Assembly: GCF_002113885.1 (NCBI RefSeq)
Contig: NW_018479965.1
Coordinates: forward strand, 1 to 64,000
Source of the DNA: Mizuhopecten yessoensis
Lineage: Eukaryota
Length of the DNA stretch: 64,000 bases
Direction of reading: 5' to 3'
A program made the translations under genes and the position numbers. Below, piece by piece: positions 15,323 to 25,412 of the stretch. The notes under the pieces were generated by a model that ran no database searches, had not been told where the DNA came from, and worked only from the letters and a program-made list of their open reading frames with translations. The number at the start of each line of letters is the position of its first letter. Position 1 is the first letter of the stretch.

Positions 15323-18300
15323 ATGTCGGACGCAGCACAGAAACTCACCTGTAACATAAGGACGAGGTTGGTATCCATTGGTATTATCACAATACTGACA
15401 TTGAGTATATATAGTGCTCGCCATTCACAAGAAGCTAGACGAACAATCTATACATCTAGGATGGTACGAGGTACTCAAGTCAGGTAAGAACTACGCTTTC
15501 CCATTGTGATAGTTTATATGACGACAATTGTTGTAAGCTGTAACATAATATATACTGCTTTGACGTGAAAGTGCATTGTAAGTTGTACCATTACATATAC
15601 TGCTCTAATGACATATGTGATACTGAAAACGCTTCTCCGTCCAGGATACTAGAATTCGCTTTCGTCGGTATCTTAGCCTGACTCTGGTTCAATGTATCTA
15701 GGTTCATTACTTGAGTATATGTACAGTCAGTTTGATTCCTTTAACAATAACAGATACTTGGTTTTATCAAACCCTAAATATTTATTATGTATTGCCTTTA
15801 TCACAGCGGAAGCGATACGAATCCCATGGTCACGCTCTACCAGCTAGGGCGCGCTCCACATTCGCCAAGTCTTACGCCATTTGCAATCAAACTTGAAACC
15901 TATCTACGGGTAGCAAACATTCCATATAAAGTGAGTTTTTACAATATTATATTTATTTTTAACTATGTAAACTGATATTGCTGTTGACACCCGGCATACT
16001 GATTCCCAGTGAACTTACAACGATAGGGGATAGATAGAACGGTTGTTATCAAACATGAGAAAATGATACTATTCGTTTGAGTAAATATACGTTTAGCATT
16101 TTAGATAAAAGAAGTGCTTGATATCAGTAGTATATTCAGTTAATGCAAATTGCAAGGCTCTCTTGACCTTTTCTATTTTGTTAGTTGCAGTGTGGCTACA
16201 AAAAAAAGAGGGCAGTAGTCAAAATTTGATAAAATGAAAGACTTGTTGATTAACATCTTTACCGCCCTCGGTAAAAAAATGTCCAATTGTTTTTAAAACC
16301 ACCAGCTTCCTGGATACATTTCTGCATGTATGAAAAATGTGTTTATCAATTTGTCAATTTAACTCCAAGCACATGCACTGACTCGTCACAAGTAATGTCA
16401 GTGTTAACAACGTTGAAATGATCAAAACCTTTTTTAAAATGTCTCCCAAAACATATGGATTGAGATTTTTTTAGGGAAAATATTCATAAAAAGTATATTT
16501 AACATGTTCTTTATGACAAAGATAGATGTTAGTTGATTAAGATATTTTGTCATGCAATCTTTTATCTCATATCATTAAAACGTTTTAGAATGACCACAGC
16601 GGAAAATCTAGCTCCAAGGGAAAATTTCCTTGGATCTCATATAATGGAAAGAAAATTGCCGACTCAGAATTCTGTATCGAATTTCTGAACAAGGAACGAA
16701 ATATTGATCTTAACAATCATTTAAGCGCCGAACAGAGAGGCGCTGGACGAGCTCTTCAGAAGATGGTGGAGGAAAATACGTACTGGTATGTTATGTTGGT
16801 AGCCGTCATTCCATCTCTTCATCATGTTATGACATAGTAGAAGTAAACTACTTCTTTAATATGGAATTGTCATATAACATATCATGCTATAACTTCGCAT
16901 AATTCAACTCCTCAATTTGAACAAATATGATCTGTTATTAAGTGCTCAAAACGAAGGTTGGGCTGCTGCTGCTTCCTTCTCCTCCTTCTTCTTTATTCCT
17001 GCCTCGTATCGAAGATGACCCCCGTAGCATCTGATTTGTCGAGATTTAAATATTGACTTATTTCGCTCAACATTGGTATGTATGTGTATTATGCAATTAC
17101 GAATACTACAGTGACTTCCGTTAGCATCACGACCACGAAAATATTGCCTGTACTCTAAACCGATCGGAAAAAATGTCGTCGCCATAGCCTTCGCTATCAT
17201 TGCTATGCTGATGACACATACACATTAATATGGTTCTCCTGTTGCACCATTTGTGCCTGATTGTCACAAAACAATAACTCAACAATTTCATAAATTGCAA
17301 CGGCACGACCACGCCGTGTACTGAGTTTATTACAAAAACACATTGCATCCTCAATATACATACTCAATTCAAATCCTATCAAATTCAATGTACATCAACA
17401 TCAATAGCGTTACTTAGATATACTTATCATACTCGCGTATCAGTTTCGTTAAAGTGATACAATGAGGAAATATCCTCAAAAATTTAGAAAATCTGTGCGA
17501 ACGTGTCGACGTGGTCGCTCTGAATGACCACCTTACACCTTACACACCCACCCGTGCGACACAAGCACGGACACTACATGCTGCCTCATGCAGCACGCAT
17601 ACGACAGGAGAAAACAATTTCAGTCTAATTCGTACCTCAAACGAATGAAATTATATTTCTCCTGTTGCACCATTTGTGCCTGATTGTCACAAAACAATAA
17701 CTCAACAATTTCATAAATTGCAACGGCACGACCACGCCGTGTACTGAAACCCAAAGAACGGGAAATGTGTATTAATAAAAAATGGCTAAATGCCTAGATT
17801 TTTTGACACCGACAGCCTCTCCTCCAAAGAATCATTGACATAACCGTCTTTAGCGTTTTCTGATCTCCATCTGCCGTGCCTCTTAAATAATCTATATCCG
17901 ATAGCTAAATTGGCTGACCTATTTGCACAACTACTAGCCCCTCCTGACCTTAAACTATGCATTCCATACTTACTAATATCCGACACAAACGGGGAAAAAA
18001 CTTCGATAAACAATTCGCGCATCCTAGTATAAGAAAGAGGCCGGTTGTCTGATCGTAGAACGAAACCCATATTGGTTTTTGTCAATGATCTGAACAGGTA
18101 ACTATCCGAACCTACTTGTATTCCTGCTAATTTGATATATATTACAAAGTTGGAAACCGGACATAACTTGGAATACGTTCTCGCTAGTACGACGAGGTTC
18201 CCATCTCTGTAGATATCGGTTTTACTTTGTTTGATAAAAATTGTCATATGACTTTCCGCCAATTCTATGTCGCACATTCTCACATTTAACAATTCCGATA

Positions 18301-21300
18301 CTCTGAAAAAACCTGCATACGCAATTAAGCATGAACAAATAGTACGCTGTGAATACAAATTACTGTCACTAAAATTTGCAGTATACATCAATTCCAATAA
18401 CTCTGGCGTTATTGGTTCTTTTCTATCTTTAGGACCAGATAAACGTCGCTTAGCCCCCTCCAAAATGTTTTTTACAAGCGCACTGTCCGTTGGCGAATTC
18501 CCACCAAAAATGGAATGAGCCCATTTTATGCTGTAAAAAGCCTGTACGATGGGGCTAGGCGAAGAACTTTGTTGCACTAGACACGCGAGATACAAAGCCA
18601 CATGGATGGCCTTAGCCGGTAAACAATCCTTCACCTCTAGTCCTTTAGACAACGCCCATTTCTTCCATCTTGAAAAACCTTGATAGTATGCCCTTGTGGT
18701 ATTATTAGCTTTACTGTCTATCAGAAGTCCAGGAAGAAGGCTGACGTGTCCGGCTAAGGCCCCAGGTAGCTCTGCAATCTCGTGCTCGAATGCCTGCGAA
18801 AATATATGTACACAAAAAACTTTTAATTACACATATCATCAAAAAATTTGTACAACAATACAAATATAAGTACAAAAAACAAACTTCTGCTTAATAGAAA
18901 AATACAAATTACAGACAGCCCTGTAATTTAGGACAACCACAGCTAATGCAGCCTGTGGTTAGGACAATTACAGACAGCACCTGTAATTAGGACAACTGCA
19001 GAAAGCACTACAGTTAGGGATGGTTAGTATTGGTTACATTAGATATCATCCAAAGTCTAATCGCAGAGCAATCATCTTGAAAGGCAGATCGATTCTCCCC
19101 AATACAGACTTATTTCCCTTCCCCAGAGAATATGAATCTTTATTAGTTGGTAAGTATAACATTCCAACCACCTCGGGTCTAAAGCCGCCACCACTTGGAC
19201 ATAAAAATGGCCAAAAACTGGCAGACCTCCACAAAGGTACAACCAACGTGCCGTATGCACCACACTGTTGCATATACTTTAGCACTCTATGCACCAAGCA
19301 TACTGGTGGCACGAACCACCCGTTCACCCCTTGCCAATCAGCTGTGAACGCGTCCATACCGGACGACTGTGTATCAAAATACCTAGAAAAATATACCGGT
19401 AGCTTTCTATTGTTGACACTGGAAAACCAGTCAATTTCGTGAGGCCCCCAAAGGGAATCTACATGGACAAAAATGTCCTTAGACACACCCCAATCATCAC
19501 AATCAATGATACGACTGATGTAGTCTGCCTGCTCATTTTCCCCTCGAGGGATCCATTCAATATCAATAGAAATACCATTTGCTAAACACGTGTCAAATAT
19601 TGACAACGCAAGACTTTGTAGCTCGGATTTCATACTCCCTTTGTTTACAATACACACAACGTTCTGGTTATCTGTGTACCATTTCACACGCTTACCTCGA
19701 AGCACGTGTACCAATGACAACAATACACTACTGACAGCTGACAATTCACGCCATGTCGAACTTTTCTCCTTCTCGCTATCACTCCACATACCGTGGGCGA
19801 AACCAACCGGGGTATCTACCTCATATCCCCCGAAACCCGTACCACTGGCGTCACTGAAAACTATTTTTTGACAGGAATAATCAAAATTAAACTTTTTCTC
19901 GTTTATTCGATCGACACTCCTTTCCCAAAAATAAAGTTGTTCAATACTTGACCTAGACAATACTATTCCGGCATTCCATGATGGGGCAGATGCTATATCA
20001 ATACTTAAGCTCTTTGTCATTATATATACAACGTTTCCCAAAATGTATGACATTGAAACTATCTGTCCTACAATAGATGCTACTTTCCTAGTCCAAACCG
20101 ACTCAAATTTTGCCATATCGGATTTGACCCCCAAAATACAGGACCGTAACTTGTCTATTCTGATCTGTGGTATTTTTAAAATGCCCAACACGGTGTCTAT
20201 AAAGTTTCCCAGAAACACTAACTGTCTAACAGGCACCCAAGTAGACTTTTCCGGTTTAGGAACAAAACCACTTTGGATCAGATCATGTTTCACCTGACAA
20301 GCTATCAACGTACACGCAGACTTGTCAGCGTGTGTACCCAGGCCGTCATCAAGATACATAAGAATTTCCTTGCCCTCAGATCGCCATTTTTTAACTAGAG
20401 GCCTGGTGATCTTACTATACAAATAACATGCGGAACTCAGACCAAAAGGTATAACTTCGAATTTGAAAAATCTGACTTTATTACCGAATCGCCATGAAAA
20501 ACCCAAAAATGTTTTGTGTGGTTCGAAAATTTCAATGTGGTGATAGGCCGAATGTATGTCAAATTTAAAACAAAAACAATCATTTTTGATAAATTGCATG
20601 GCCACCCTTATATCTTCAAACTTTACACTACATTTCCACAGGTGTGCATTGACGTGTCTCAAATCTAATATAAGACGTTTCTTACCGCTAGCTTGAACGG
20701 ACACTGTCAATGGGTTAGTGACGTAAGGCATCTCGCTACACTCTACAACCAATGACCTTGCTACCAGATCTAAGATCGCTTTCTCAACAAATGATTCATG
20801 TTTCAACGCCGACTGATTATTTTTTAACCATACCGAACATGGAGTAGAATAAAAGGGAATCTTGTACCCGTTTCTGATAGTATCCAATATAAAATTGCTA
20901 CATCCTATACTCTCCCAGAACGAAATACGTCCTTTTAATCTACCCTTGACTTTGATATCAGCTTGCCCTTGCTCGTATTCATAAAAATCATCAGTCAAAA
21001 AATACTCATCTTTTACAAAGTCACTCTTTTCCGCCTGCACGACTGGACTTGGCTTGGCCTGGACACTCGTTTCTCCAGTGTGAGAATGATCCACAGCTAA
21101 AACATCCGCCTCCAGTCGTCCGCCTTCGTTGTGGGTAAGTGTGTGCGTGTGCTGACCCGGCCTGGGATGCGGGCCACGCGTTGACCCATGACTCCTGACC
21201 TTGGGGCACACGAAAGGGCAACTGAACACCAGAAACACCAGGACCAACACTCGCAGGCTTGTAGACACTTTGTTTACGATTGTGCTGTTGTTGTTTTCCC

Positions 21301-24300
21301 TTCTTTTTCTTGAGGGCCCGATTCTCCGCCCTGTTGATTTTCCCCTCATCGTCAGAATTACTTGCTATTGGATTGTGCTCGTAATGACGCACAGTTTCCC
21401 ATCCACCGTCACTGGTATCCGCGATTTTAATTAATTTGTTTCGCTTGGACAATTTCTCCTGCACACTAGCTACTAATTCGCACGCATAGTCGACCTTTAC
21501 ATTTTGTAAAGCCCAAGACACTTGATCCAAATCTTCCTTTATTTCTGTGTTGAGGGCAAACTGCAGTCTATGACTCTCGCTTTTCCATTTGAAAGAATGT
21601 TCCACCTTTAAACGCTTGACCTGGGCGGACACCTGCCCGGCCGACCCCTTTACTTCCTCCTTCAATTCCCCAATTTCGCGCCGTAAATTTGCGTTTATAG
21701 ACGCAATACTGTCACCTTGCGATTTCACGGCGTTTAGAATGTCTCCTAAACTTATCTGTCCTCCTGAATTTAAAACTCCATCACTTGGAGGCAGTGAAGA
21801 ACCCTCTGCAGGATCAGACATCGAAAAATGTGTTTACTTTACCTCGCTCTCAGTACTTTAGAAAATCTGTGCGAACGTGTGTCGACGTGGTCGCTCTGAA
21901 TGACCACCTTACACCTTACACACCCACCCGTGCGACACAAGCACGGACACTACATGCTGCCTCATGCAGCACGCATACGACAGGAGAAAACAATTTCAGT
22001 CTAATTCGTACCTCAAACGAATGAAATTATATTCATCAAACAACAGGCCAGTTGGGATACAATTTCAGAAAAGCTTGTCTGACAAATATCAGTACCTGGA
22101 GGAACGCCAAATGCTAAAGCTTAATCAGGAAAAGACGGAACTAATCGTCTTTCCCCAAAGTGTCAGCAAACAATGACTCTCCAGCTCAAGGTTGGTGTCA
22201 GAACTATCGAGACTCTCCCAGCTGTTAAAAACTTAGGGGTATACTTTGATAGTTCACTGAACATGGCGAAACAAGTGAACGCTATTGCCAAATCCTGTTA
22301 TATAACTACCAGATCAGGAACATCGGCTGTTTCCGGAAGTTTATAACTAAAGATGCATGCAAGATTTTGGTTCATTCACTTGTTACCTTTCGGTTTAATT
22401 ATCTGTCAAACTAACTAGTCGTCTGCAGAGGGTCCAGTACACTGCAGCACGGCTGGTTACTCGTACTCGAAAGAGAGAGAGCACATCAAGTGGTATCTTC
22501 ATTGCACTGGTTACCTATACGATACAGGTCGCAGTACACAATTTTGGTAAACAAACAATGCACTGAATGGAACAGCTTCCCAGTACCTACAAGAGCTTGT
22601 TACCCTGTATCAGCCGTCAGAATCTTTGTTGTTTGTTCCAAACTCTCGTACTGTGACCTATGGAAACCGGTGCTTTGTGAGGATTTCGGCTACGTTATGG
22701 ATAAGCTTACCAAATGCTATAATAAAGTCAAATACCCTGGCCAAATTCAAGAAGGACATAAAAACTCACCTCTTTACGTCTGCATTTTAGGCTCTTTGCA
22801 AAGACGTTATGTAAATACCATCCTTTATTTATTCATTTATGTTCACATTGCGATGATTATCTGCTTGAGTAATGTATAAAGGTGATTGTAAGCTTTTTTG
22901 TTTCACAATTATAACTAATACTACTATTCATATGTTGTGAAGAGCTCTTGAGTAATTTTACAAATTATGTAGGGCGCTATATAAATGATGTATATTATTA
23001 TCATTAATATTATTATCATCTACGAGTGTTACAACCGCCTTTACCATTAGAACTTGTTTGGAATATGCTAGTAAACTAGCATCACAATCGAGTTCCGTTT
23101 TCTGAGACAGTCAATGTTTCAAAATAAATTCTGAATGCACAGAAAGTTAAGCTATGTGTTTGCAATTTAATTGCAACTAGATGTAGCAGCCAACATCGTG
23201 TGTTTGTGTTTCCCTCCCGGATGTACCAAAGGACGATAGTGTTGTCAAAGATCTTTTCGTACCTTCCAAATAGTCAAAGAGTGATGCATTAAACAAAAAG
23301 ATGTATAACGTTTTCCAAAGTCATTTCGAGTTATTTCGAGTTGCACAGCGACTATTACCAAATATATAGGATATAACATTATGCCATTACATTAGAATTT
23401 GGACTATTATCCGAATACATTAAAAAACCATTTCTGTTCATATTTTATGGCTTTTGTGAATTTTCAAATATTAATTTTGTTTTTATCTCAGGTATGATCA
23501 TGGTCAAAACTGAACAGAATTTACGATAGGGAATAATAATTCTTTAAAAATAGTTTTTGTCGTCCTTCATTAAGACCGTACTCCTTTCTCCTGATATAGG
23601 ACTGTAGTTCTCGACCGTTGGGTGTATGACAAGACGAACGGAGCTCCCACTGCTTTAGGGGTCCCTAAAATACTGCGGTGGCTCTTTAGGTCAAGGATTA
23701 AGACCGCGGCCAAAAAACAAGGGATGGGACGACATACCCAAGATGAAGTCGAACAAATCCTGCGTAGTGACATCAACGCCGTTTCTGATTATATTGGTAC
23801 GTAAAAAAAGAAGACAATTCTAGATGACGTAAAATGTAAGCAAAAGGAAATTGCATTATCGATTTGTTTAAATAATTTTGTGAATATATATAAAGAAATG
23901 ATACATTACTACAATGTACTAAAATTCGCGATTCTCCTCGGTGGATTTATGAATAACGACCTGAATAAAAACAAAAATGATTTGCTGACATCATCTTATT
24001 CATGGTGCGCTGATAGTACGCCCCCATTTGATATAAACTATTGTACGCTATGTTAGTGTAAATATATGAATACGAAATGCAGACACAACCTATCAATATT
24101 CTACTACTTACAGAAGACAGACATCGTATTACACCAGGTTGTGGGACGCGGTATCCCTATAAATAGGAAATATAAAATCACCAATAATGTTTACTTTATA
24201 TGATGGCGAACGGAGTTAAAAGTATCAATAGTTTGATATTTAATACAACTAATTGATTAACATGAAGTATGTTCAGGGGCTTCATAATGGGGGAAAAAAC

Positions 24301-25412
24301 ACGCACATTTGTCAAATCTTTGCTAATTTGCCTGATAAGATTTCAACGGAAGTTTATATTATATATATGTCTTTTTAAACTTTCTCCATGTATCTGTATT
24401 TTAATGCTTTCCTTATTGGATAACTGATGGACTACTTTTGGAGTAATAATATCTTAAATAGAAATATTTGTCTCAATAAGCATGTACCAGTAACATAACA
24501 TATAGAAACGGAGGTCCAATTTAGGTCAGATACACATACTTATGGCCTCGGCCACGAGGACTTTACGGTATGTGAGCTAGGTCAGATACACATACTTATG
24601 GCCTCGGCCACGAGGATTTTACGGTATGTGAGCTGTAGCCTGTCCAAGTTCAATGAACATCAAGGTGGATGTAAATAACGTAAATAACGTAAATAATATA
24701 CATAGTCACATACTTCAAAAGCTTCTTTCAATACATAACAGGCACAAAGAAGTTTCTGTTTGGAGATGCAGTGTCCCAGTATGACTGTGCCGTATTTGGT
24801 ATGATGGCAGCTATGTTCTATGAACCATTTGGTGGAATAGCTAGAGGCGTCATTACTGGTAATTGTTTCGATAAAAATATAAATCACCTGATAAAGCTAT
24901 CTGTAATTTTCGGATAAAAATATTAAAGTAAAAGGGGGACGATCACATGTTTTCTTTTTAAGTTTTGCGTAAACATATCTACTAATTTATATCAATGCTC
25001 TTAATGTACATATATTGAATAATGAATTAATTCATTAGTGTTCCATATTTGAAAATGGGAAATATCAGTTGTATTTCAAAATACATTTTCATATCAGTTG
25101 GCAATTGTGAGCTTCCAACATAATTGTGAGGGGATAGAAGTGTTCTGTACCCTTTTCTTTGGGAACATTGTAGAGACTAAATGAAGATATGTAGCAAACT
25201 TTCAATAGTTTCAATTTTATATCTTCATTTCAACTTTGTCGGTCACTCGTATTCTCGCTCCCTCTTGATTGGATAAATCATACAACCTTTGTTATACTTT
25301 TTACTCAGATTTTCCCGTTGTGCGTGGCTACTGTGATCGCATGAAGGCGGAGTTCTGGCCGGATTGGGAAGAATGTACGACCGGCGGAGGAACCAGGCAG
25401 GCCACCAAATAG
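15323..25412 (+). CDS. FAXC: Failed axon connections homologue (metaxin/GST-like), 299 aa, 6 exons
   Basis: Exons 15323-15483, 15807-15930, 16589-16785, 23600-23796, 24742-24858, 25309-25412 (900 nt, GT-AG, phases consistent). Motifs PSLTPFAIKLETYLRVANIPY, SSKGKFPWISYNG..IADS, GMGRHT.DEV, KKFLFGD...DCAVFG, YCDRMK.EFWPDW; N-terminal hydrophobic anchor. Confidence 0.9.
17786..18793 (-). CDS. DIRS tyrosine recombinase; frame open from a splice acceptor at 18793 with no 5' ATG
   Basis: Motifs AYAGFFRVSEL, KQSKTD, HSLRSGGAS, RHGRW and DGY. The frame extends 47 codons upstream of the track's TTG start to ttttcgcag|GCA. Confidence 0.9.
   Translation of the reverse strand, partial: AFEHEIAELPGALAGHVSLLPGLLIDSKANNTTRAYYQGFSRWKKWALSKGLEVKDCLPAKAIHVALYLACLVQQSSSPSPIVQAFYSIKWAHSIFGGNSPTDSALVKNILEGAKRRLSGPKDRKEPITPELLELMYTANFSDSNLYSQRTICSCLIAYAGFFRVSELLNVRMCDIELAESHMTIFIKQSKTDIYRDGNLVVLARTYSKLCPVSNFVIYIKLAGIQVGSDSYLFRSLTKTNMGFVLRSDNRPLSYTRMRELFIEVFSPFVSDISKYGMHSLRSGGASSCANRSANLAIGYRLFKRHGRWRSENAKDGYVNDSLEERLSVSKNLGI
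18906..19015 (-). other. Array of four tandem stem-loops with a constant linker in the DIRS pol-YR spacer
   Basis: Four 8-9-bp stems with compensatory changes, each separated by aggac (GUCCU on the element's sense strand). Confidence 0.8.
19046..21349 (-). CDS. DIRS pol: reverse transcriptase, RNase H and Dam-like methyltransferase domain
   Basis: 767-aa open frame with KKRLILDLR, FDIHSAYHHI, PFGLSSA, YLDDG; FSDAS, STWREL, WYTDNQ, NEQAD; and the C-terminal IDWFSS..N.KL..YFSR...DAF..W...PP. Confidence 0.95.
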   Translation of the reverse strand: MRGKSTGRRIGPSRKRRENNNSTIVNKVSTSLRVLVLVFLVFSCPFVCPKVRSHGSTRGPHPRPGQHTHTLTHNEGGRLEADVLAVDHSHTGETSVQAKPSPVVQAEKSDFVKDEYFLTDDFYEYEQGQADIKVKGRLKGRISFWESIGCSNFILDTIRNGYKIPFYSTPCSVWLKNNQSALKHESFVEKAILDLVARSLVVECSEMPYVTNPLTVSVQASGKKRLILDLRHVNAHLWKCSVKFEDIRVAMQFIKNDCFCFKFDIHSAYHHIEIFEPHKTFLGFSWRFGNKVRFFKFEVIPFGLSSACYLYSKITRPLVKKWRSEGKEILMYLDDGLGTHADKSACTLIACQVKHDLIQSGFVPKPEKSTWVPVRQLVFLGNFIDTVLGILKIPQIRIDKLRSCILGVKSDMAKFESVWTRKVASIVGQIVSMSYILGNVVYIMTKSLSIDIASAPSWNAGIVLSRSSIEQLYFWERSVDRINEKKFNFDYSCQKIVFSDASGTGFGGYEVDTPVGFAHGMWSDSEKEKSSTWRELSAVSSVLLSLVHVLRGKRVKWYTDNQNVVCIVNKGSMKSELQSLALSIFDTCLANGISIDIEWIPRGENEQADYISRIIDCDDWGVSKDIFVHVDSLWGPHEIDWFSSVNNRKLPVYFSRYFDTQSSGMDAFTADWQGVNGWFVPPVCLVHRVLKYMQQCGAYGTLVVPLWRSASFWPFLCPSGGGFRPEVVGMLYLPTNKDSYSLGKGNKSVLGRIDLPFKMIALRLDFG
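21021..21821 (-). CDS. DIRS gag with CCHC zinc knuckle
   Basis: 266 aa with RNKLIKIADTSDGGWETVRHY and CFSCGSFSHWRNEC; overlaps pol in another frame. Confidence 0.9.
   Translation of the reverse strand: MSDPAEGSSLPPSDGVLNSGGQISLGDILNAVKSQGDSIASINANLRREIGELKEEVKGSAGQVSAQVKRLKVEHSFKWKSESHRLQFALNTEIKEDLDQVSWALQNVKVDYACELVASVQEKLSKRNKLIKIADTSDGGWETVRHYEHNPIASNSDDEGKINRAENRALKKKKGKQQQHNRKQSVYKPASVGPGVSGVQLPFRVPQGQESWVNAWPASQAGSAHAHTYPQRRRTTGGGCFSCGSFSHWRNECPGQAKSSRAGGKE
24522..24633. repeat. 56-bp tandem duplication, each unit with a nested hairpin
   Basis: taggtcagatacacatacttatggcctcggccacgaggactttacggtatgtgagc repeated twice with one mismatch. Confidence 0.85.

What the first reader, a model, noticed from the sequence alone, without database searches (positions are those of the whole stretch)
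18906..19015. Four-unit co-varying RNA hairpin array between DIRS pol and recombinase
Seen on the element's sense strand: AACUGUAG-ugcuuu-CUGCAGUU, GUCCU, AAUUACAG-gugcugu-CUGUAAUU, GUCCU, AACCACAG-gcugcauuag-CUGUGGUU, GUCCU, AAAUUACAG-ggcugu-CUGUAAUUU. Stem sequences differ between units but pairing is kept by compensatory changes. The AG/CU closing pairs, a GC dinucleotide in each loop and the 5-nt linker are constant. The only non-Watson-Crick pair is a U-G wobble on the sense strand (a C-A mismatch on the other strand), which points to selection on RNA structure. The array lies 30 nt after the pol stop and about 110 nt before the YR acceptor. Inference: a multivalent protein-binding element, such as a Gag packaging signal present only in unspliced RNA, or a switch for YR splicing or translation. 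I know of no description of such an array in DIRS elements.
Basis: partly seen in the sequence, partly recalled or inferred. Interest (0 to 1): 0.78.

Follow-up and report, generated by a model that had tools for sequence, protein, structure and literature searches.

The report
Four-hairpin repeat inside a scallop retrotransposon
A jumping gene of a scallop carries, between two of its genes, four tandem copies of a short stem-loop whose stems differ but still pair; the feature is real and probably shaped by selection on folding, but it is confined to one small family, so its role remains a modest open question.

Summary
Window 19020-18906 (minus strand, the element's sense strand) holds four 28-31 nt tandem units. 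Each is an 8-9 bp stem-loop, and the units are joined by a constant GTCCT linker. The array starts 30 nt after the pol stop and ends 110 nt before a conserved splice acceptor that leads the tyrosine recombinase (YR).

All 32 stem cells pair. Four pair columns vary, three of them on both sides, and there is one G.U wobble (null P 0.002 to 3.5e-5).

The host is an intact PAT-like (DIRS-order) retroelement, probably of the Yesso scallop. Three 99.5-99.7% identical copies have different flanks, so the array-bearing lineage moved recently.

- The array occurs only in this family. A sister family has one similar hairpin. Pecten, Argopecten, Mytilus and Pinctada relatives have none, and their post-pol sequence is not unusually structured.
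- With RNA parameters the best fold is not four hairpins, because units 2 and 4 cross-pair.
- Tandem repeats are common in the non-coding parts of these elements.
- RNA-seq was too thin to show splicing.

Best reading (about 0.4): a lineage-specific amplification of a post-pol stem-loop that acts on the unspliced genomic RNA as a multivalent protein-binding module. Main rival (about 0.3): a neutral palindromic minisatellite. This scan had not noted it before on other DNA.

The parts
18906..19020 (-). The hairpin array: four tandem units including the leading TCCCT linker
18994..19015 (-). Unit 1: 8-bp stem with one U.G wobble and a 6-nt loop
18966..18988 (-). Unit 2: 8-bp stem with a 7-nt loop. 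Its arms can also pair with the arms of unit 4.
18935..18960 (-). Unit 3: 8-bp stem (TT/AA replaced by CC/GG) with a 10-nt loop
18906..18929 (-). Unit 4: 9-bp stem with a 6-nt loop. It is the unit most like the single hairpin of sister family L006.
19023..19029 (-). TACTAAC, a branch-point-like heptamer just upstream of the array. Each linker plus stem start also reads CTAAY (three of four units).
   Evidence: read directly; not tested further
19046..21349 (-). pol ORF: RT, RNase H and a weak Dam-like methyltransferase tail
21021..21821 (-). gag ORF with a CCHC knuckle. Its first 63 or 67 codons are the probable first exon of the YR mRNA. Candidate donors are CAG|GT with the exon ending at 21633 or at 21621, both in phase 0.
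17786..18793 (-). YR coding exon. The acceptor AG lies at 18795-18794 after a T-rich tract. There is no ATG, because ATA stands where Mytilus relatives have ATG.
21879..22033 (-). Terminal repeat A1, identical to A2 at 17503-17657
17229..17324 (-). Terminal repeat B2, 98% identical to B1 at 17652-17747. The element's 3' end lies here.

Best explanation
The array is a family-specific, four-fold local amplification of one short stem-loop that sits just after the pol stop of a PAT-like tyrosine-recombinase retroelement. After duplication the copies diverged by paired transitions that kept the stems intact, while the GUCCU linkers and the GC-containing loops stayed constant.

It most likely works on the sense-strand, full-length RNA. 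The short stems hold the constant linker and loop motifs single-stranded (UCUG occurs at three loop/stem junctions). Four copies give avidity for a protein that marks the intron-containing genomic RNA, most plausibly the element's own CCHC Gag for packaging, or a host export or stability factor.

The array lies in the intron that is removed when the Gag leader exon is spliced to the YR exon, so the spliced YR mRNA would lack it.

Shown: the anatomy, the co-variation, the conserved acceptor, recent mobility of array-bearing copies, and restriction to this family. Inferred: use of the splice, RNA rather than DNA as the acting form, and any protein partner. It is an accessory module, not a core signal of the group.
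For: - Perfect pairing is kept through changes on both sides in 3 of 4 varying pair columns. Null P is 3.5e-5 or 0.0024.
- All nine stem substitutions are transitions, as expected for a path through G.U intermediates.
- Both non-Watson-Crick pairs in the clade are G.U on the sense strand: unit 1 here and the L006 hairpin.
- The sense RNA folds better than the antisense RNA: MFE -42.4 against -33.8, z -4.8 against -3.5.
- The linker is invariant while the stems vary.
- Sister family L006 keeps one hairpin very like unit 4, although the rest of its spacer cannot be aligned and the flanking coding DNA is only 68% identical.
- The array is intrinsic to the element. It is found nowhere else in the genome and is not complementary to the termini.
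- Three copies, 99.5-99.7% identical, have different flanks and different 5' truncation points and carry the array unchanged, so it is compatible with transposition.
- Intron context: the T-rich tract plus CAG before the YR is conserved in 25 relatives, the pectinid clade has no ATG there, and a Pinctada model joins the Gag N-terminus to the YR.
- Gag has a C-x2-C-x4-H-x4-C knuckle.
- Cis-acting export and packaging elements of retroviruses are likewise lineage-specific and replaceable (PMC11379458, PMC5035971, PMC4829213).
Against: - The array is confined to one low-copy family. L015, two Pecten maximus copies, a Logan contig (L043), Argopecten, Mytilus and Pinctada relatives have no such array.
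- The first 90 nt after their pol stop are not unusually structured.
- A packaging or export signal would be expected in every family, though it could lie elsewhere in the element.
- Only four units in effectively one sequence carry the co-variation, so the statistics rest on nine substitutions.
- The RNA MFE is not the four-hairpin form.
- Tandem repeats also occur in other non-coding parts of these elements.
- No RNA evidence: raw RNA reads gave zero coverage over 18820-19305 and no junction.
- There is no Rfam match.
Confidence: 0.4

Rival explanations
1. It is a neutral minisatellite. A palindromic unit in an unconstrained spacer was duplicated by slippage. Complementarity of the arms is created and restored by a mutational process, such as intra-strand template switching during replication or snap-back by reverse transcriptase, not by selection. 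On this view the array has no function.
For: - Only one young, low-copy family has it.
- Relatives manage without it, with spacers as short as about 100-140 nt.
- Other families carry unrelated tandem arrays of 33-, 43- and 80-nt units in the same spacer. Copy number varies between copies (2.6, 4.7 and 6.7 units). Their small hairpins are not kept by compensation.
- Tandem repeats also lie downstream of the YR in seven loci.
- Template switching is documented to create and maintain perfect hairpins and to mimic compensatory change (PMC8794818, PMC5453318).
Against: - The linker stays invariant while the stems change.
- At least four separate paired changes, all transitions, with the one unpaired change being a sense-strand wobble, fit stepwise compensation through G.U better than block conversion.
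- The L006 hairpin is retained in an otherwise unalignable spacer.
- Other arrays in the same genome do not show this degree of perfect pairing: 5 strong hairpins against 0.4 expected here, while most others are at expectation.
Confidence: 0.3
2. It is a regulator of YR expression on the RNA. One version is a set of masked pseudo-3' splice sites: CUAAY branch-like linkers plus ACAG|G held in the stems, with UACUAAC just upstream. Another version is a two-state fold in which units 2 and 4 pair either locally or with each other. Either would tune how often the Gag-leader donor is joined to the YR acceptor, as the Rous sarcoma virus negative regulator of splicing does. A further version is a structure that promotes internal translation of the YR.
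For: - The array is 110 nt upstream of a conserved acceptor.
- Each unit carries CTAAY and ACAG|G, and TACTAAC lies at 19029-19023.
- Two alternative folds are close enough to coexist if folding is co-transcriptional.
- Arrays in other families repeat GGTGA(G)-type motifs.
- Decoy splice signals that keep retroviral RNA unspliced are established (PMC3082916).
Against: - The window units have no consistent 5' splice-site motif. Only unit 2 reads CAG|GTG.
- The branch-like A lies only about 7 nt from the AG of the same unit.
- Relatives with the same acceptor have no array.
- No splice junction was seen at all.
- The YR frame has no ATG in this family, which argues against internal initiation.
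Confidence: 0.13
3. It is a DNA-level element. One version is a block of paired transcription-factor sites acting as an internal enhancer or promoter for the YR. The other is a set of hairpins in the single-stranded cDNA intermediate that the element's own recombinase recognises by shape, as integron integrase recognises folded attC sites.
For: - With DNA parameters both strands fold as exactly four hairpins, z -5.6 and -4.2.
- DIRS-1 amplifies through linear single-stranded cDNA, and its priming is unknown (PMC7192593).
- The stems happen to contain TAACTG/CAGTTG (Myb-like), TGTGGTT (Runx-like) and TAATTA/TAATTG (homeodomain-like) words (the motif identities are from my own knowledge).
- Other notes of this scan report hairpin-ended YR DNA transposons in the same genome.
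- Raw RNA reads cover the YR but not 18820-19305.
Against: - The array is internal, not at the A/B repeat junction where recombination must occur.
- It is not complementary to the termini.
- The spacing between arms varies from 6 to 10 nt and the arm sequence differs between units, which is unlike sites for one sequence-specific dimer.
- The stems are perfect and lack the extrahelical bases that define attC.
- The wobble becomes a C.A mismatch on the minus-strand cDNA.
- Matches to short factor motifs are expected by chance.
- Read depth of 1-3 cannot define a transcription start.
Confidence: 0.1

Closest known systems
Retroviral packaging signals (Psi), for example the MLV and HIV-1 stem-loop clusters
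   Same: Both are clusters of short stem-loops present only in unspliced RNA because they lie inside the intron of the subgenomic mRNA. Both expose short motifs for a CCHC nucleocapsid; UCUG-type words occur at three loop/stem junctions here. Alternative pairings exist in both.
   Different: Psi lies in the 5' leader just after the major donor, whereas this array lies near the 3' end of the intron after pol. Nothing here shows Gag binding. The array is missing from sister families, whereas Psi is universal within a retroviral genus.
Constitutive transport elements and related export elements (MPMV CTE, MusD MTE, MER11 CTE)
   Same: Both are cis-acting structured RNA in intron-containing genomic RNA. 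They are built from degenerate direct repeats, are lineage-specific, are gained and lost, and work better in multiple copies. The nested fold here shows two similar internal loops made by the GUCCU linkers.
   Different: There is no sequence or Rfam similarity. NXF1 binding was not tested. Known CTEs lie near the 3' end of the genome and are 160 to over 1000 nt long.
Rous sarcoma virus negative regulator of splicing
   Same: Both are intronic elements that could keep genomic RNA unspliced in a retroelement whose subgenomic mRNA borrows the Gag start codon.
   Different: The NRS works through a decoy 5' splice site that binds U1/U11 and SR proteins. The window units lack a consistent 5' splice-site motif.
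Internal minisatellites of transposable elements
   Same: Both are tandem units of tens of bases in a non-coding part of an element. Unit number varies between related families. The same spacer holds unrelated arrays in other families of this genome.
   Different: Ordinary arrays do not keep perfect 8-9 bp intra-unit stems through changes on both arms.
Integron attC sites and other folded single-strand substrates of tyrosine recombinases
   Same: In both, the sequence is variable and the structure is conserved. Hairpins are associated with a tyrosine recombinase, and there is a single-stranded DNA stage in the life cycle (shown for DIRS-1).
   Different: attC sites mark cassette boundaries and need extrahelical bases and R/L boxes. 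Here the stems are perfect, the position is internal, and the wobble favours the RNA-sense strand.

Membership tests
DIRS-order retroelement, PAT-like type (the host element) | Reverse transcriptase plus RNase H in one pol ORF | tested here: met
   PF00078 at E 3.5e-12 and PF17917 at E 6.5e-6
DIRS-order retroelement, PAT-like type (the host element) | Tyrosine recombinase instead of a DDE integrase | tested here: met
   PF00589 matches at E 1.8e-4, below its cut-off. There are 761 homologues at E<=1e-30, many carrying PF00589, and the R..H..R..Y-region columns are conserved.
DIRS-order retroelement, PAT-like type (the host element) | Dam-like methyltransferase domain after RNase H (present in the DIRS1 and PAT groups, absent from Ngaro) | tested here: inconclusive
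   PF05869 matches at E 3e-4 with 21 bits, below the 28.1-bit cut-off. The same family is precomputed on many relatives.
DIRS-order retroelement, PAT-like type (the host element) | Split direct repeats (A1 ... B1-A2 ... B2) rather than inverted terminal repeats plus an internal complementary region | tested here: met
   The A repeats are 155 nt and identical, and the B repeats are 96 nt and 98% identical. B1 abuts A2. No inverted repeats were found.
Retroviral-type packaging signal | Present in genomic RNA but removed from the spliced subgenomic mRNA | tested here: inconclusive
   The acceptor is conserved in 25 relatives, and one Pinctada model joins the Gag exon to the YR. No junction reads were found in RNA-seq of this species.
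Retroviral-type packaging signal | Specific binding by the element's Gag/NC and a requirement for encapsidation | not testable with these tools
   This needs binding and packaging assays.
Conserved structured RNA family (any Rfam family, including CTE-like elements) | A match to a curated covariance model | tested here: not met
   There were 0 matches at E<=1 over 17200-22050 on both strands.
Conserved structured RNA family (a new one) | The structure is kept with covariation across independent related sequences | tested here: inconclusive
   Covariation exists among the four units and there is one similar hairpin in L006. It is absent from 8 other relatives.
Decoy 5' splice-site element (RSV NRS type) | A consensus-like 5' splice site able to bind U1/U11 | tested here: not met
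   Only unit 2 reads CAG|GTG. Units 1, 3 and 4 have no GT after the AG.
attC-like folded single-strand recombination site | Imperfect inverted repeats with extrahelical bases, placed at the boundaries of the mobile unit | tested here: not met
   The stems are perfect, without bulges. The array is internal, about 3 kb from the 5' end and 1.7 kb from the 3' end.
Simple tandem repeat (minisatellite) | Head-to-tail copies of one unit | tested here: met
   TRF reports period 28, 3.4 copies and 70% matches.

The most novel reading that the evidence does not exclude
The array is the first recognisable cis-acting structured RNA signal of a tyrosine-recombinase retroelement. It would be a multivalent stem-loop platform, carried only by the unspliced genomic RNA, that the element's CCHC Gag or a host export factor reads. 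It would have been born recently by amplification of a single post-pol hairpin and kept by compensatory evolution. A more radical variant is that the same hairpins act in the single-stranded cDNA as shape-recognised sites for the element's recombinase.
Probability: 0.3. Interest if true: 0.65.

Novelty: new variant of a known kind. Interest (0 to 1): 0.42.

Why it matters
Almost nothing is known about how DIRS-order elements choose, export, package or prime their RNA. The one experimental system (Dictyostelium DIRS-1) has not identified a primer or a packaging signal.

This family is short, recently active and low-copy, and it offers three things at once. It has a compact module with visible compensatory changes. 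It has a conserved splice acceptor that implies a Gag-leader-to-recombinase subgenomic mRNA. It has close relatives that lack the module. Together these give a natural with/without comparison for binding, export, splicing and transposition assays.

If the array proves neutral, it is still a clean example of how perfect hairpins can arise and diversify inside a tandem repeat. That bears on how much weight few-sequence 'covariation' should be given.

Tried and rejected
1. MAFFT alignments of the units and of putative homologous hairpins put the arms out of register. I therefore counted pairs on a hand-made structural alignment in a script and built no covariance model.
2. I tested whether every related family has a hairpin right after the pol stop. 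By eye L015 and Pecten maximus show 6-bp stems near an (A)ATCCT word. However, folding of the first 90 nt gave z-scores of -0.8 to +2.3 in 8 relatives, so I dropped the claim.
3. I tested whether hairpin arrays are a general feature of this spacer. Strong hairpins are enriched only here and in L035. Tandem repeats are also common downstream of the YR, so recurrence is weak evidence.
4. A count of G.U against A.C in stems across families gave 13 against 4. I did not use it because the sense strand is G/T-rich and no composition control was run.
5. I tested whether the array is an inserted satellite or MITE. It is not found elsewhere in the genome.
6. I tested whether it is an ICR-like complement of the termini. 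There was one 10-nt match against about 4 chance 9-mers.
7. I looked at GTCC as a recombinase target, a lead from note s1-528574. There is no GTCC at the element ends or at the B1/A2 junction.
8. RNA evidence for splicing was inconclusive. One read-laying run gave depth 0-3 and no joints at the acceptor. Contigs stop at 18832 and restart at 19022, on either side of the array.
Donor conservation was therefore checked only in external loci, where the GT is part of a conserved valine codon and so is uninformative.
10. I did not build or search the joined Gag-exon-plus-YR protein. Each exon was searched by reference only. The run of N in locus L004 was left as it is.
Full report
**What is there.** On the minus strand of the window, which is the sense strand of the element, the stretch 19020-18906 reads as TCCCT, then four units, each a 5' arm, a loop and a 3' arm.
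- The units are joined by three identical GTCCT linkers.
- The stems are 8, 8, 8 and 9 bp long, and the loops are 6, 7, 10 and 6 nt.
- The pol stop codon is at 19048-19046, 30 nt before the array.
- An AG at 18795-18794, preceded by a T-rich tract, is 110 nt after it.

**Is it more than chance?** Several independent measures say yes.
- TRF reports a 28-nt period with 3.4 copies.
- A degenerate unit pattern matches twice in the window and never in 100 shuffles.
- A looser pattern matches seven times in the 988-Mb genome, always in copies of this element. The reversed control matches zero times.
- The spacer has five strong hairpins against 0.4 expected from dinucleotide shuffles.
- On a hand-made structural alignment all 32 stem cells pair. 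Four of the eight pair columns vary. Three of them vary on both sides, and the fourth is C-G against U.G.
- All nine stem substitutions are transitions.
- The number of changes per arm was kept as observed and the changes were placed at random. The chance that both diverged units still pair fully is then 3.5e-5 for any substitution.
- For transitions only, with at least four pairs changed on both sides, the chance is 0.0024.
- These figures rest on nine substitutions in what is effectively one sequence.

**How it folds.** The fold depends on the energy model.
- With RNA parameters the sense strand has an MFE of -42.4 kcal/mol (z -4.8). The antisense strand gives about -34 to -35 kcal/mol depending on the exact stretch folded (z -3.5).
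- The RNA MFE is not four hairpins. Units 2 and 4 have the same stem sequence, so the outer arms pair with each other and the inner arms pair with each other around hairpin 3.
- The four-hairpin form scores -34.6, and local hairpins 2 and 4 have an equilibrium probability of 0.06.
- Co-transcriptional folding would favour the local form, so two states are possible.
- With DNA parameters both strands fold as exactly four hairpins (z -5.6 and -4.2).

**The host element.**
- The pol ORF (21349-19046) has RT and RNase H domains. Its tail weakly matches Dam methylase, and the same family is precomputed on many relatives.
- The gag ORF (21821-21021) ends in a C-x2-C-x4-H-x4-C knuckle.
- The downstream ORF is a tyrosine recombinase.
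- The ends are split direct repeats. A1 (22033-21879) equals A2 (17657-17503), B1 (17747-17652) matches B2 (17324-17229), and B1 abuts A2. There are no inverted repeats.
- This is the PAT-like architecture of the DIRS order, not the DIRS1 type.
- Protein hits name Mizuhopecten yessoensis and Pecten maximus as nearest, and earlier notes of this scan call the genome the Yesso scallop.
- The copies on contigs C76644 and C471 are 99.5-99.7% identical to the window copy up to the element's 3' end. Beyond it they have different flanks, and they have different 5' truncation points.
- These are therefore separate, recent insertions, and they carry the array unchanged. A fourth, gapped copy has one change in the outermost pair of unit 2.

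**Is the array intronic?** The evidence favours it, but use of the splice is not shown.
- The YR frame has no ATG near its start in this family.
- In 25 relatives from scallops, mussels, pearl oysters, a limpet and unnamed assemblies, the YR domain is always preceded by x-F-[F/L/S]-Q. That is a T-rich tract followed by CAG. Whatever lies upstream of it is unrelated.
- Mytilus copies have ATG at that spot. The window, L015, both Pecten maximus copies and two Logan contigs have ATA or GTA.
- A Pinctada imbricata gene model joins the first 47 residues of Gag (E 1e-10 against the window's Gag) to the YR exactly at this CAG, across about 2.7 kb.
- In the window two phase-0 CAG|GT sites lie at the homologous place, with the exon ending at 21633 or at 21621.
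- The GT is part of a conserved valine codon, so its conservation proves nothing.
- RefSeq models of Pecten and Mizuhopecten also splice into the same acceptor, from pol exons.
- The acceptor is thus well supported by conservation, and the donor by one model.
- In this species the splice is not shown. The one reads call gave depth 0-3, no junction, and no coverage over 18820-19305 in raw RNA reads. Contigs end at 18832 and start at 19022, on either side of the array.
- I did not build or search the joined protein.

**Relatives.**
- The array sequence occurs only in the four copies of this family.
- The sister family L006 (68% nucleotide identity in the flanking coding DNA, single degenerate copy) has one hairpin directly after its pol stop. 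It is very like unit 4 and has one G.U on the sense strand. The rest of its spacer cannot be aligned.
- The following have no such unit: L015 (YR 70% identical), two Pecten maximus copies, a Logan contig (66%), Argopecten irradians, two Mytilus-type copies and Pinctada.
- The first 90 nt after their pol stop fold no better than shuffles.

**Other families in the same genome.**
- Several carry unrelated tandem arrays in the same spacer: 10 x 43 nt (L016-19), 80-nt units x 2.6-6.7 (L023, L025, L026), 9 x 33 nt (L028), and irregular arrays (L021, L029, L031).
- Their hairpins are short and are not kept by compensation.
- Strong hairpins are enriched only here and in L035.
- Tandem repeats are also frequent downstream of the YR.
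- Recurrence is therefore weak evidence for function.

**What it most likely is.** Four observations point to selection on pairing in a single strand with the polarity of the RNA.
- The linker is invariant.
- The paired changes are all transitions.
- The wobbles lie on the sense strand.
- A single hairpin is retained in the sister family.

The intron context means such a signal would mark only full-length RNA. I therefore favour a family-specific, amplified stem-loop module that presents GUCCU linkers and loop/stem UCUG-type words to a protein. The protein would be Gag for packaging, or a host factor for export or stability of the unspliced RNA. Confidence is about 0.4. Retroviral export and packaging elements are likewise lineage-specific and replaceable (PMC11379458, PMC4829213, PMC5035971).

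**Rivals.**
- The main rival (0.3) is a neutral palindromic minisatellite whose arms are kept complementary by template switching, a documented process (PMC8794818, PMC5453318).
- Control of YR splicing or translation is a smaller rival (0.13). Each unit has CUAAY and ACAG|G words, and UACUAAC lies just upstream. The units lack a 5' splice-site motif of the kind used by the Rous sarcoma virus regulator (PMC3082916).
- DNA-level roles are also possible (0.1), either as an enhancer or as folded single-strand sites for the recombinase. DIRS-1 uses single-stranded cDNA (PMC7192593), but the array is internal, has perfect stems, and its wobble is on the wrong strand for the cDNA.

**Known or new.**
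- There is no Rfam family match.
- Four of the five literature searches bore on prior description, and none of them found a description of structured elements or arrays between pol and the YR in DIRS-order elements.
- The kind of thing, a cis-acting structured module in the intron of a retroelement's genomic RNA, is known. This form and host are not.
- I rate it a new variant of a known kind, with moderate interest. The anatomy is clean and testable. The evidence for function rests on few substitutions, and the feature is confined to one small family.

Noticed in passing
window 18793-18805 (-); loci L015, L042, L043-L045, L057, L058, L060, L084: The YR coding region of this whole bivalve clade is preceded by a conserved T-rich tract plus CAG, read as x-F-[F/L/S]-Q. 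Mytilus copies have ATG there, while the scallop clade has ATA or GTA. With the Pinctada model that joins Gag residues 1-47 to the YR, this suggests a Gag-leader-to-recombinase spliced mRNA, as in Rous sarcoma virus env.
   Followed up: partly
L016-L019 (10 x 43 nt), L023/L025/L026 (80-nt units), L028 (9 x 33 nt), L021, L029, L031: Other diverged families of the same element group carry unrelated tandem arrays in the pol-to-YR spacer. Many units contain GGTGA(G) or GGTGG words and 5-7 bp hairpins. Unit number differs between copies of one family (2.6, 4.7 and 6.7).
   Followed up: partly
L042 5800-5830, L082 4615-4640, L084 4560-4615, L044 3280-3300, L045 3840-3890: A GGTGGTGG-type G/T-rich word recurs shortly after the pol stop in Pecten maximus, Argopecten irradians and Mytilus-type copies. 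In the scallops it follows an (A)ATCC word. It is not present in the window family.
   Followed up: no
window 20065-20452: One contig of run X1 joins 20065 to 20452, skipping 386 nt inside pol, with ends TC..TA and so not intron-like. A deleted variant of the element exists in that sample.
   Followed up: no
G000 contig C76644, 84.9-87.9 kb and 89.3-92.7 kb: Two copies of the family lie about 4.3 kb apart on one contig in the same orientation, the second interrupted by a run of N. This may be a tandem or nested arrangement.
   Followed up: no
window 18906-19015, both strands: The stems contain words that match common transcription-factor sites: TAACTG/CAGTTG (Myb-like), TGTGGTT/AACCACA (Runx-like) and TAATTA/TAATTG (homeodomain-like). 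On the plus strand the linkers read TTAGGA(C), with one TTAGGG. These are probably chance matches.
   Followed up: no
window 18846-18865 (-): A fifth, separate 7-bp hairpin (ATTTGTA-ttgttg-TACAAAT) lies in the A/T-rich stretch between the array and the acceptor.
   Followed up: no
window 24522-24633: Two tandem copies of a 56-nt unit (98% identical) lie outside the element.
   Followed up: no
L042 8126-9666; L084 6780-7379; L025 3079-3912; L041 3416-3912: Long tandem arrays (28-nt x 55, 45-nt x 13, 137-nt x 6, 37-nt x 13) lie downstream of the YR genes of related elements. I did not resolve whether they belong to the elements or to the flanks.
   Followed up: no
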